In this document: piece by piece, positions 49,124 to 51,308 of the stretch
Layout of the letters: the number at the start of each line of letters is the position of its first letter
Numbering within the stretch: the stretch's first letter is position 1
Origin: Felis catus
Taxonomy: Eukaryota
Assembly (NCBI RefSeq): GCF_018350175.1
Contig: NC_058382.1
Coordinates: 15,004,001-15,068,000, forward strand
DNA length: 64,000 nucleotides
Reading direction: 5' to 3'
Notes under the pieces: generated by a model
What the model was told of the DNA's origin: nothing
The model's input: the letters and a program-made list of their open reading frames with translations, nothing else
The model's database searches: none
Program-made: the position numbers and the translations under genes

Positions 49124-49199
49124 ATGCAGAGCCGCGGGCCCGCCTCCGTGCTGCTGTTGCTGCCGCTGCCCCTGCTTCTGGCGCTGCTGCCGGGGGCCG
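49124..49199 (+). CDS. CCER2: CCER2 exon 1 (signal peptide)
   Basis: CCACCATG Kozak; Leu-rich h-region; G|gtgagt. Confidence 0.9.
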
Positions 49200-51308
49200 G
49201 TGAGTGCCAGGAACTGGAGAGGGCACCTCTGCGGCCAGCTCAGGGACCAGGGACTGGGGGTGTGGGGGGCGGGAACGGTGCACCCATTGGGGTTGGACTA
49301 GAGACTTCACGGGCTGAGCTTCCAGGTAGGGACGGTGCACCTGGCAGGTAGGCTGGGGAGAGGACCGTGGATCAGCACCGAGGACAGTGCCCGCGGGGTA
49401 CCGAGGGTACCAGCACCCATCTCCTTCCTCCACAGCCACCGCTGCTCCCTTGGCGCCAAGACCTTCCAAGGAAGAGGTGAGGAGTGCAGACCCCTTGCCC
49501 TGCCTCATCTTCCCCAGACCCTGGCCCTCCCTGACCGGCCTCCATGATCATCTCCCTCCCAAACTTCCCACTGCTCTCATTCCCCCCGTCTGCCCTACCC
49601 TCAACCTCCCCTCTGACCCTTCACGCCCAGCTGACCCGCTGTCTGGCAGAAGTGGTCACAGAAGTGCTGACGCTGGGCCAGGCCCAGAGAAGCCCCTGCA
49701 CAGCTCTCCTCCACAAAGGTAAGGAGGGCCCAGGCCCCAGAGCCTCTCGGGAGCCCCCACCCCACCCGGGGTTCCGGCCGGGGCTGCCTGGAGGAAAGGT
49801 GGTCTCATCCCAGGGCCCCCTTGCCTGGGCTGGCACGGCACGCCCGGTGTCCCGTCCGGCCTCCAGCCCCACCCTGGGGGGGTCCCTGCAGAGGTACGGG
49901 ATGGGGGCAGAGAACATCCCCCAGACCTGACCCTCCTCTCCCGGTTTTGGGCAGCCCCCCTGTGGGGCCTCGGGCAGGCCCCAGAACTCCTCCAGGTCCG
50001 GTTCCGATTCTGCCGCACAGAGAGCATCCTCTCTCTTTCCACCAGAGATGTGTGAGACAGAGCCCTACGGCTGTGTGTCCACCAAAGAGAAAGGCCTGCT
50101 GGTTGGGGATTTCAAGAAGCAAGAGGCTGGGAAGATGAGGTCCAGCCAGGAAGCGAGGGATGAGGAAGAGGCAGCCGAGAGGGCCCACAAGTCTGAGGTG
50201 CGGGAACAGACCATCCGCGAGCAGCTCCATAGCCGGCTCCACCAGGAGGAGGAGGAGGAGCAGGAGCGGGAGGAGGAGGAGGAGGAGAGGAAGAAGAGGG
50301 GGCCCGTGGAACCCTTCGAAGGCCCGTGGAAGCGGCGCCCAGAGGGTGGAGGGGGGCCCCACAAGCGAGTGGCAGAGCAGGCCAGTGACGAGGAGACAGC
50401 CCAGTTTGAGGCCGAGGAGAAGGGTGTGCAGGTGCTGGGCACGGGCCACGGCCTGTGGCAGGGGGCCGAGGCGGGTGGAGGAGAAAGGCACGAGGACTCG
50501 CCGCATCACCACCGCCTCCACCAGCCAGAAGCCGGGCCCAAGCAGGAGGAGGAGGAAGAGGCTTCCGAGAGGGAGGTGAGTGGAGGCCACGGGCAAGCGG
50601 GGTAGGCCAAACGGCCAGTGGAGTCGACCACCAAATGGGTACCAGTTGGGCCGTAAACGGCCACTGTCCACCACAAATGGACCATGGTGACCGGAACGGA
50701 CACCAGGACTAGGCAGCGACTTCCGAGCAAGGCCCCTGCTTGGCCAAGATGGCTTCCACACCAAGAGTACAGTAACCAAGATGGCCACCAGAATCGCGCG
50801 GAAGCGTCCGAGTTAGCCGCCACCGTAGTCAGTAACGCGCCGTCTGGCCACGTGAAAAGTGGCTGCCGTGCTCGGTTCGCTGGACCACAGGTGGACACCA
50901 GTGCTGGGCCGTGGAAAGAAAGACGTCCCCGTGACTGGCGGCAGCAGCCTAACCGGCCAGCACCTCACAAATGGGTCAGGGCCCCTTTACTAGCCCCACC
51001 TGCTGTCGTTGGCCGTGGCGGTCCACGCAGACTGCACCGCTGGCCACGCTGGCCAGTCTAACTCTTCCACTGCGGTCACCACCGCGGTCCGTGGGGCCTA
51101 GAGGACCGCTGCCGGCTGCCGGCATGCAAACTGACATGGCCCACATTCATGGGTGACTCCTGAGGGGGCCTGCCCTTGAAGGTGGGTGGGCTGATCAACC
51201 CGTTTCTGATCCCCCCAGGAGCATGACACGGTGCGGCTGGAGCACGTGCGAGATGAGCTAAAGAAGGCAACGGAGCTTCTGGGGGAGGAGATCAGGAGGG
51301 AGGGATGA
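49124..51308 (+). CDS. CCER2: Coiled-coil glutamate-rich protein 2, 274 aa, secreted, chromogranin-like; 5 exons
   Basis: Exons 49124-49199, 49436-49476, 49631-49718, 50046-50575, 51219-51308 total 825 nt, open; [24 protein letters not shown] and ..[17 protein letters not shown] match recalled human CCER2; position between SARS2 and NFKBIB. Confidence 0.93.
49371..49391 (+). promoter_or_regulatory. RE1/NRSE (REST binding site) in CCER2 intron 1
   Basis: ATCAGCACCGAGGACAGTGCC versus consensus TTCAGCACCnnGGACAGCGCC, canonical 2-nt spacer. Confidence 0.85.
49436..49476 (+). CDS. CCER2: CCER2 exon 2
   Basis: cacag|CCACC..GAG|gtgagg. Confidence 0.9.
49631..49718 (+). CDS. CCER2: CCER2 exon 3 (Cys loop)
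   Basis: [29 protein letters not shown]; G|gtaagg. Confidence 0.92.
50046..50575 (+). CDS. CCER2: CCER2 exon 4 (acidic body)
   Basis: accag|AGATG..GAG|gtgagt; Glu runs, dibasic sites, His cluster. Confidence 0.92.
51219..51308 (+). CDS. CCER2: CCER2 exon 5
   Basis: ccag|GAGCAT..GGATGA. Confidence 0.9.
   Translation, partial: EHDTVRLEHVRDELKKATELLGEEIRREG

What the first reader, a model, noticed from the sequence alone, without database searches (positions are those of the whole stretch)
49124..51308. CCER2 appears to be a third chromogranin A/B paralogue
Seen: signal peptide (probable cleavage ATA|AP); exon 3 = [29 protein letters not shown]; a large Glu-rich exon 4 with dibasic sites; exon 5 ending [23 protein letters not shown]; intron phases 1-0-1-0. 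Recalled: CgA exon 3 VMKCIVEVISDTLSKPSPMPVSQECFETLRG and CgB VTRCIIEVLSNAL..PECRQVLK have Cys at exon position 4 and six residues after the second Cys, exactly as here (loop two residues shorter). CgA ends LSAIEAELEKVAHQLQALRRG, giving a shared L-x2-[IV]-x2-EL-x-K..L..[LI]RR-x0/1-G pattern. CHGB has the same five-exon plan. Recalled human paralogy (RIN3/CHGA 14q32; RIN2/PAK5/CHGB 20p; RINL/PAK4/CCER2 19q13; NFKBIA/NFKBIB) fits a whole-genome-duplication origin. The strict PROSITE granin patterns are not met, which could explain the generic name. Inference: a dense-core-granule prohormone or granulogenic protein. Automated family classifiers may already group it with chromogranins; I know of no functional study as a granin.
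Basis: partly seen in the sequence, partly recalled or inferred. Interest (0 to 1): 0.92.

Follow-up and report, generated by a model that had tools for sequence, protein, structure and literature searches.

The report
CCER2: an overlooked chromogranin A relative
The little-studied secreted protein CCER2 shares its two end domains, its intron positions and its promoter layout with chromogranin A, so it is very probably a diverged, previously unrecognised relative of the proteins that build hormone-storage granules.

Summary
Window 49124-51308 (+) holds a five-exon felid CCER2 gene with intron phases 1-0-1-0, a signal peptide, a Cys-loop exon 3, a Glu-rich exon 4 with dibasic sites and a short helical last exon.

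- **Negative on the cat sequence:** cat and other placental CCER2 do not hit Pfam Granin. They fail both PROSITE-type granin patterns. They were not linked to chromogranins by an exhaustive HMM search.
- **Positive through marsupial and turtle CCER2:** profile-profile tests against real CHGA sequences match at both ends, in order. N-domain without signal peptide: P=4.7e-7. Last 32 residues: P=4.4e-6. No column shuffle reached either score.
- **Pfam:** the turtle C-terminus hits Granin end to end (E=3.8e-4, below the curated cut-off).
- **Gene structure:** all four cat introns have CHGA counterparts with the same phase. Three sit at exactly the aligned residue. The first lies at the same place relative to the inferred signal-peptide cleavage site. 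Marsupial CCER2 also keeps CHGA's mini-exon 4.
- **Regulation:** both genes have a CRE-TATA promoter and an RE1 site in intron 1.

CHGB, a whole-genome-duplication origin and granule localisation were not tested. No paper in the library links CCER2 to granins. The scan noted this only on this same stretch.

The parts
49025..49032 (.). Palindromic cAMP-response element TGACGTCA, 31 bp upstream of the TATA box
   Evidence: regex. Bear CHGA (L001) has the same octamer upstream of its TATA box.
49064..49069 (+). TATA box (TATAAG), about 55 bp upstream of the ATG
49124..49199 (+). Exon 1: start codon and most of the signal peptide; followed by a phase-1 intron
   Evidence: The split codon lies 3 codons before the predicted cleavage site, as in CHGA.
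49373..49387 (+). RE1/NRSE core (REST silencer site) in intron 1
   Evidence: Bear CHGA has the same core in its intron 1 (L001 2164-2178).
49436..49476 (+). Exon 2: end of the signal peptide and mature N-terminus; followed by a phase-0 intron
   Evidence: The same phase and position (3 residues before Cys1) are seen in CHGA and dunnart CCER2.
49631..49718 (+). Exon 3: 88 nt, Cys-x18-Cys loop domain homologous to CHGA exon 3; followed by a phase-1 intron six residues after Cys2
50046..50575 (+). Exon 4: 530 nt acidic Glu-rich body with a second, placental-specific Cys pair and RKKR, KRR and KR sites; followed by a phase-0 intron
50363..50467 (+). Most conserved internal stretch (KR followed by about 33 residues), conserved from turtle to mammals; candidate processed peptide
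   Evidence: tblastx, 80% identity to dunnart over 35 aa; the motif is present in turtle P0151.
51219..51308 (+). Exon 5: 29-residue amphipathic heptad helix ending basic-basic-x-Gly plus stop; homologous to CHGA exon 8
51537..51542 (+). AATAAA polyadenylation signal
   Evidence: read directly from the sequence.

Best explanation
CCER2 is a short, diverged paralogue of chromogranin A. Common descent is the shown part. The shared pieces are the signal-peptide exons, the exon-3 disulphide-loop domain, an acidic dibasic-studded body and the last-exon amphipathic helix ending in basic residues plus Gly. They occur in the same order and are split by introns at the same places and phases. Marsupials keep the ancestral six-exon form, including the CHGA-like mini-exon that starts with a split Asp codon followed by ER-x-L/T-S-x-L. 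Placentals lost that exon and gained a second Cys pair. The function is inferred. The protein enters the ER. The N-terminal loop and Ca2+/low-pH aggregation of the Glu-rich body would sort it into regulated dense-core granules of REST-negative, ATOH1-lineage neuroendocrine cells (Merkel cells, hair cells). Prohormone convertases would then cut at RKKR, KRR and KR sites, releasing among others the strongly conserved peptide that follows the KR site. I put homology at about 0.88 and the granule-cargo function at about 0.55.
For: Profile-profile (hhalign) against tool-returned CHGA. Marsupial CCER2 N-domain without signal peptide: probability 92.6%, P=4.7e-7, 36 columns spanning both Cys and the motif that follows them. 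Column shuffles: 0 of 120 reached the score (null 9.6 +/- 2.0, observed 34.7). Last 32 residues: probability 86.6%, P=4.4e-6. That match is the unique best hit at the extreme C-terminus in both directions, and 0 of 300 shuffles reached it. Full length against full length, the two best hits are the N- and C-terminal matches, in colinear order. Single-sequence phmmer with Z=1: dunnart N-domain against CHGA P=1.3e-8; turtle C-terminus P=5.3e-8. Pfam: the turtle CCER2 C-terminus has Granin as its top family, E=3.8e-4, profile positions 553-585 of 585. Gene models: CHGA phases are 1,0,1,1,1,1,0; dunnart CCER2 1,0,1,1,0; cat 1,0,1,0. Boundaries fall at identical aligned residues. Orthology of the intermediates: dunnart CCER2 lies between SARS2 and NFKBIB-SIRT2-RINL and is colinear with the window. 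The turtle protein hits the placental CCER2 profile at E=3e-8. Language-model neighbours of lion and dunnart CCER2 are three Chromogranin-A clusters (0.85-0.88). CRE, TATA and an intron-1 RE1 site occur in both the cat CCER2 and the bear CHGA gene. Literature: CCER2 is a Merkel cell carcinoma marker enriched in the prototypic neuroendocrine cell cluster (PMC12623243, PMC9974098), it is hair-cell specific by smFISH (PMC7221106), and it is measurable in human plasma (PMC13088631).
Against: No placental CCER2 and neither cat end-domain exon matches Pfam Granin at E<=10. Marsupial sequences do not either. The turtle hit (19.9 bits) is below the curated cut-off of 25. An exhaustive hmmsearch of 1.84 billion representatives with a placental profile found no chromogranin. 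Narrow CHGA HMMs do not single out the cat exons among 2393 window ORFs. The placental-only N-domain match covers 16 columns (score 22.4), only modestly above a reversed-sequence control (17.6). Alignment diversity is low (Neff about 2), so hhalign P-values are rough. Nothing here shows granule localisation, Ca2+ binding or processing. Hair cells are not classical dense-core-granule cells.
Confidence: 0.8

Rival explanations
1. CCER2 is a true chromogranin A homologue but no longer works as a granin. It would be a constitutively secreted or extracellular acidic protein of hair cells and Merkel cells, for example a Ca2+-buffering or matrix factor, and the family resemblance would be only historical.
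For: Placentals lost the mini-exon and remodelled the region after the loop with a new Cys pair. The formal granin signatures are gone. The protein is found in plasma (PMC13088631). The strongest normal expression reported is in cochlear hair cells, which are not classical dense-core-granule cells (PMC7221106).
Against: The loop exon, the C-terminal helix and the dibasic sites remain under conservation across mammals. The CRE, TATA and RE1 layout matches CHGA. CCER2 is enriched in the prototypic neuroendocrine cell cluster of Merkel cell carcinoma (PMC9974098). CgA itself circulates in plasma.
Confidence: 0.3
2. The resemblance is convergent or due to chance. CCER2 would then be an unrelated acidic, coiled-coil secreted protein whose composition and heptad helices mimic granin ends.
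For: The matches are short (16-36 columns), helical and in compositionally biased proteins. Reversed controls score 11.6-19.2. Curated models do not recognise the protein. Language-model scores below 0.9 are only leads.
Against: There are two independent matches at the correct ends and in the correct order. No column shuffle reached any of the three scores (0 of 300 for the C-domain, 0 of 120 for each N-domain test). The similarity grows in the slower-evolving marsupial and turtle orthologues. Four introns share phase and aligned position, and a fifth is shared by marsupial CCER2. An RE1 site sits in intron 1 of both genes.
Confidence: 0.08
3. CCER2 is homologous to CHGA but arose by a later small-scale duplication of CHGA in a tetrapod or amniote ancestor, not by the vertebrate whole-genome duplications.
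For: CCER2 was found here only in placentals, marsupials and turtles. It resembles CHGA specifically: the mini-exon, the C-terminal basic-basic-Gly ending in turtle, and Chromogranin-A as nearest clusters.
Against: The searches were weak for distant taxa, because they used a placental profile and a word index. RINL lies about 9 kb from CCER2, and from memory RIN3 lies near CHGA within the well-known 14q/19q13 paralogy. CHGB could not be compared.
Confidence: 0.25

Closest known systems
Chromogranin A (CHGA, Pfam PF01271 Granin)
   Same: Both have a signal peptide split by a phase-1 intron 3 codons before the cleavage site. Exon 3 starts 3 residues before Cys1 and ends 6 residues after Cys2 in phase 1. 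Marsupial CCER2 shares the mini-exon 4. Both have an acidic body of about 20% Glu with dibasic sites, and a phase-0 last exon of 81-90 nt encoding a heptad helix that ends in basic residues plus Gly. Both have a CRE-TATA promoter and an RE1 site in intron 1. Both are expressed in neuroendocrine tumours.
   Different: CCER2 is about 270 aa against about 450 aa. It has 5-6 exons against 8. The loop is 14-18 residues against 20. Placental CCER2 has two extra Cys and lacks the mini-exon. There are no catestatin, pancreastatin or WE-14 regions. It fails the Pfam threshold and both PROSITE-type patterns. Its normal expression centres on ATOH1-lineage cells rather than adrenal or enteroendocrine cells.
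Chromogranin B (CHGB, secretogranin I)
   Same: From memory only: a five-exon plan with a loop exon 3, a giant acidic exon 4 and a short C-terminal exon 5, which is the same count as placental CCER2. Its N-terminal loop is the classical granule-sorting signal.
   Different: No comparison was made here because no CHGB sequence was obtained. CHGB is about 680 aa. The turtle and marsupial CCER2 endings and the mini-exon look more like CHGA.
Other 'granins' (SCG2, SCG3, SCG5, VGF, PCSK1N)
   Same: They are acidic, dibasic-rich regulated-secretory cargo proteins.
   Different: These are grouped by properties, not by sequence homology. CCER2, in contrast, shows specific domain and intron homology to CHGA.

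Membership tests
Granin (Pfam PF01271) | Score at or above the curated gathering threshold (25 bits) | tested here: not met
   No hit at E<=10 for the cat exon 3-5 translations or for 26 placental CCER2, or for the marsupial sequences. The turtle C-terminus scores 19.9 bits, E=3.8e-4, at profile positions 553-585 of 585.
   the patterns match 115 of 120 and 101 of 120 CHGA sequences but 0 of 125 CCER2 sequences and not the window protein.
Chromogranin A/B gene family (common descent) | Homologous N-terminal disulphide-loop domain directly after the signal peptide | tested here: met
   hhalign, marsupial against CHGA: P=4.7e-7. Placental only: P=3.8e-4. No column shuffle reached either score. 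phmmer P=1.3e-8.
Chromogranin A/B gene family (common descent) | Homologous C-terminal domain at the extreme C-terminus | tested here: met
   hhalign P=4.4e-6. It is the unique reciprocal best hit, and 0 of 300 shuffles reached it. The turtle sequence also hits Pfam Granin and the CHGA HMMs.
Chromogranin A/B gene family (common descent) | Shared exon-intron plan and intron phases | tested here: met
   all four cat introns, and five dunnart introns, coincide in phase with CHGA introns. Three of the cat introns fall at exactly the aligned residue, and the first lies at the same place relative to the inferred cleavage site. CHGB was not tested.
Chromogranin A/B gene family (common descent) | Similarity to CHGB as well as CHGA | not tested
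Granins (functional definition) | Acidic, Glu-rich secretory protein with multiple dibasic sites | tested here: met
   mature pI about 5.0, Glu 22.8%, with RKKR, KRR, KR, KK and RR sites. There is a signal peptide.
Granins (functional definition) | Residence in dense-core granules, Ca2+/low-pH aggregation, heat stability, regulated release | not testable with these tools
   Only indirect evidence exists: neuroendocrine and ATOH1-lineage expression and presence in plasma (PMC9974098, PMC12623243, PMC7221106, PMC13088631).

The most novel reading that the evidence does not exclude
CCER2 is the missing third ohnologue of the CHGA/CHGB pair, retained from the vertebrate genome duplications. It would serve as the dedicated granin of ATOH1-lineage mechanosensory cells (Merkel cells, hair cells). 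There it would drive dense-core granule formation and be cleaved to a conserved, so far unknown bioactive peptide that starts after the KR site at window 50363-50368.
Probability: 0.3. Interest if true: 0.85.

Novelty: new variant of a known kind. Interest (0 to 1): 0.72.

Why it matters
To my knowledge, only CgA and CgB have been regarded as true sequence homologues within the granin group. A third, shorter homologue that escaped the curated signatures would extend that family. It would give a functional hypothesis for an uncharacterised gene that is already used as a Merkel cell carcinoma marker and as a hair-cell marker. It would also point to new candidate peptides and a plasma biomarker related to CgA. 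The marsupial and turtle forms provide the intermediates needed to widen the Granin model. The hypothesis is directly testable with standard sorting and secretion assays and with a knock-out mouse.

Tried and rejected
- **Family scans on the cat gene:** Pfam on the cat exon translations and on 26 placental orthologues gave no Granin hit. NCBIfam gave nothing.
- **Exhaustive search:** hmmsearch with the placental profile gave 39 hits. All were CCER2 or exon-level ORFs, and none was a chromogranin.
- **Window six-frame ORFs:** CHGA N- and C-domain HMMs did not pick out the cat exons above noise.
- **Relic of mini-exon 4:** I looked in cat intron 3. An AG-bounded stretch at 49925-49995 would begin with a split Asp codon. 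It would shift the frame, it shows no nucleotide similarity to the dunnart exon above shuffles, and the longer predicted isoforms do not use it. Rejected.
- **Sequencing reads:** There is no read evidence for splicing or tissue.
- **CHGB:** my last homologue search used a bait alignment, A3. The bait was used for fetching only and never for statistics. The search returned 120 placental CHGA sequences. Any CHGB hits fell below the listing cap.
- **PDB:** it holds only CgA peptides.
- **Literature:** there were no hits for CCER2 with 'granin'. Hits for CCER2 with 'chromogranin', 'secretogranin' or 'neuropeptide' were few (5, 1 and 5 papers); in the three I opened the co-mention was incidental, and nothing in the other titles or abstracts points to a family link.

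Full report
**1. The observation**

The stretch holds a clean five-exon gene on the + strand. The exons are 49124-49199, 49436-49476, 49631-49718, 50046-50575 and 51219-51308. Every intron is GT..AG. The 825-nt CDS encodes 274 residues, and the intron phases are 1-0-1-0.

Exon 4 is 97% identical to Panthera leo CCER2. All named hits among the 120 listed (of 192 database hits) are CCER2, so the window is felid.

An alignment of 26 placental orthologues (A1) shows the following:
- a signal peptide;
- a Glu-rich body;
- a conserved C-terminal helix.

The mature cat protein has pI about 5.0 and 22.8% Glu, with RKKR, KRR and KR sites.

The neighbours are an F-box gene, SARS2 (37.4-46.8 kb, +), NFKBIB (51.7-59.5 kb, -) and the start of SIRT2.

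**2. Direct tests on the cat and placental sequences are negative or weak**

- Pfam Granin is not hit at E<=10 by the cat exon translations or by any of 26 orthologues.
- A placental profile searched against 1.84 billion representatives gave 39 hits, none of chromogranin length.
They match 0 of 125 CCER2.
- CHGA-domain HMMs do not single out the cat exons among the window's six-frame ORFs.

**3. Intermediates change the picture**

The exhaustive search also returned marsupial CCER2 (P0132, brushtail possum; later P0161, dunnart) and a partial turtle protein (P0151, Terrapene).

Evidence that these are CCER2 orthologues:
- The dunnart gene lies between SARS2 and NFKBIB-SIRT2-RINL and is colinear with the window.
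- The turtle protein matches the placental CCER2 profile at E=3e-8 and carries the family's conserved internal motif.

What they look like:
- Marsupial proteins have only two Cys. After Cys2 they carry a motif that closely resembles the CHGA segment at that position.
- The turtle protein ends in a helix plus basic-basic-Gly, like CHGA.
- The turtle C-terminus has Pfam Granin as its top family: E=0.023 for the whole fragment and E=3.8e-4 for the last 42 residues. It aligns to profile positions 553-585 of 585, which is end to end. The score of 19.9 bits is below the curated 25.

**4. Real CHGA sequences**

My last homologue search used a bait alignment (A3). It returned 120 named placental CHGA proteins. 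These confirmed the recalled termini. All statistics below use only tool-returned sequences. CHGB was not listed and could not be tested.

**5. Profile-profile and reciprocal tests**

| Comparison | Result | Controls |
|---|---|---|
| Full-length CCER2 (A5) against CHGA (A4) | Two best hits are the N-terminal match (P=2.4e-5, signal peptide included) and the C-terminal match (P=9.3e-3), in colinear order | – |
| Marsupial N-domain, no signal peptide | Probability 92.6%, P=4.7e-7, 36 columns, score 34.7 | Shuffle null 9.6 +/- 2.0, max 16.7, 0 of 120; reversed 19.2 |
| Placental-only N-domain | P=3.8e-4, 16 columns, score 22.4 | Shuffle null 9.4 +/- 1.9, max 14.0, 0 of 120; reversed 17.6 |
| Last 32 residues | Probability 86.6%, P=4.4e-6, score 25.5; unique best hit at the extreme C-terminus in both directions | Shuffle null 8.4 +/- 1.8, max 18.7, 0 of 300; reversed 11.6 |

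The placental-only N-domain result is modest on its own.

Sequence-level tests with Z=1:
- Dunnart N-domain against CHGA by phmmer: P=1.3e-8.
- Turtle C-terminus against CHGA by phmmer: P=5.3e-8.
- CCER2 domain HMMs hit all 120 CHGA sequences; the top hits lie at the expected N- and C-terminal positions.

The nearest named ESM-Atlas clusters of lion and dunnart CCER2 are three Chromogranin-A clusters, with scores 0.85-0.88 and 165-182 of 256 features shared. This is a lead, not proof.

**6. Gene structure**

I mapped a bear CHGA protein and the dunnart CCER2 protein onto their loci.

| Gene | Exons | Intron phases |
|---|---|---|
| Bear CHGA | 8 | 1,0,1,1,1,1,0 |
| Dunnart CCER2 | 6 | 1,0,1,1,0 |
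| Cat CCER2 | 5 | 1,0,1,0 |

The shared boundaries are these:
- Intron 1 splits the codon 3 positions before the signal-peptide cleavage site.
- Intron 2 (phase 0) lies 3 residues before Cys1.
- Intron 3 (phase 1) lies 6 residues after Cys2. Exon 3 is 94, 88 and 88 nt in CHGA, dunnart and cat.
- The last intron (phase 0) lies at the aligned residue pair. The last exons are 84, 81 and 90 nt.

CHGA and dunnart CCER2 also share a phase 1-1 mini-exon (69 and 51 nt) that begins with a split Asp codon. Placentals lack it, and a marsupial isoform skips it. I found no convincing relic in cat intron 3.

**7. Regulation and expression**

- Cat CCER2 has TGACGTCA 31 bp upstream of a TATA box and an RE1 core in intron 1.
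- Bear CHGA has the same octamer, a TATA box and an RE1 core in its intron 1.
- This builds on note s1-162460. The dunnart locus did not match the strict CRE and RE1 patterns.
- CCER2 is used as a Merkel cell carcinoma marker (PMC12623243).
- It is hair-cell specific in mouse cochlea by smFISH (PMC7221106).
- It is quantified in human plasma (PMC13088631).
- No paper in the library combines CCER2 with 'granin'.

**8. Reads**

**9. Verdict**

- Homology of CCER2 with chromogranin A is very likely, about 0.88. It rests on two colinear terminal-domain matches, intron identity and intermediates of confirmed orthology.
- CCER2 does not meet the formal Granin signatures. I therefore file it as a diverged variant rather than a signature-positive member.
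- The relation to CHGB, the timing of the duplication and the granule or prohormone function remain inferences. I put the granule function at about 0.55.

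Noticed in passing
window 49025-49069 and 49373-49387; L001 1763-1794 and 2164-2178: Cat CCER2 and bear CHGA share the same regulatory layout: a perfect TGACGTCA CRE just upstream of a TATA box, and an RE1/NRSE core on the same strand in intron 1. 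The dunnart locus did not match the strict CRE and RE1 patterns.
   Followed up: partly
window 50051-50074 (start of exon 4); alignment A1/A5: Placental CCER2 has a second conserved Cys pair (Cys-x6-Cys) exactly where marsupial CCER2 and CHGA have the mini-exon 4 helix. Marsupials have only the two loop Cys. This looks like a placental remodelling of the sorting domain.
   Followed up: partly
window 50363-50467: The most conserved part of the protein is not either terminus. It is an internal stretch that begins right after a KR site, is about 80% identical to dunnart and is recognisable in turtles. It contains an S-x-E motif of the kind phosphorylated in the secretory pathway. It is a candidate processed peptide.
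   Followed up: no
L002 10855-10905: The dunnart CCER2 mini-exon (51 nt, phase 1-1) is skipped in a predicted Gracilinanus isoform (P0153). This shows how placentals could have lost it without a frame shift.
   Followed up: partly
window 49925-49995: An AG-bounded stretch in intron 3 would read on from exon 3 with a split Asp codon. It would shift the frame and shows no similarity to the marsupial exon above shuffles, so it is probably chance.
   Followed up: yes
window 25956-26657 (+), 37307-46770 (+), 51712-59471 (-), 59868-63954 (+): Gene neighbours are an F-box gene, SARS2, NFKBIB (ankyrin repeats) and the 5' part of SIRT2. The order is the same as in the dunnart locus, where MRPS12 and RINL flank the block.
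   Followed up: partly
window 35931-36083: A run of N (assembly gap or masked stretch). I left it untouched.
   Followed up: no
I worked beside them afterwards.
   Followed up: no
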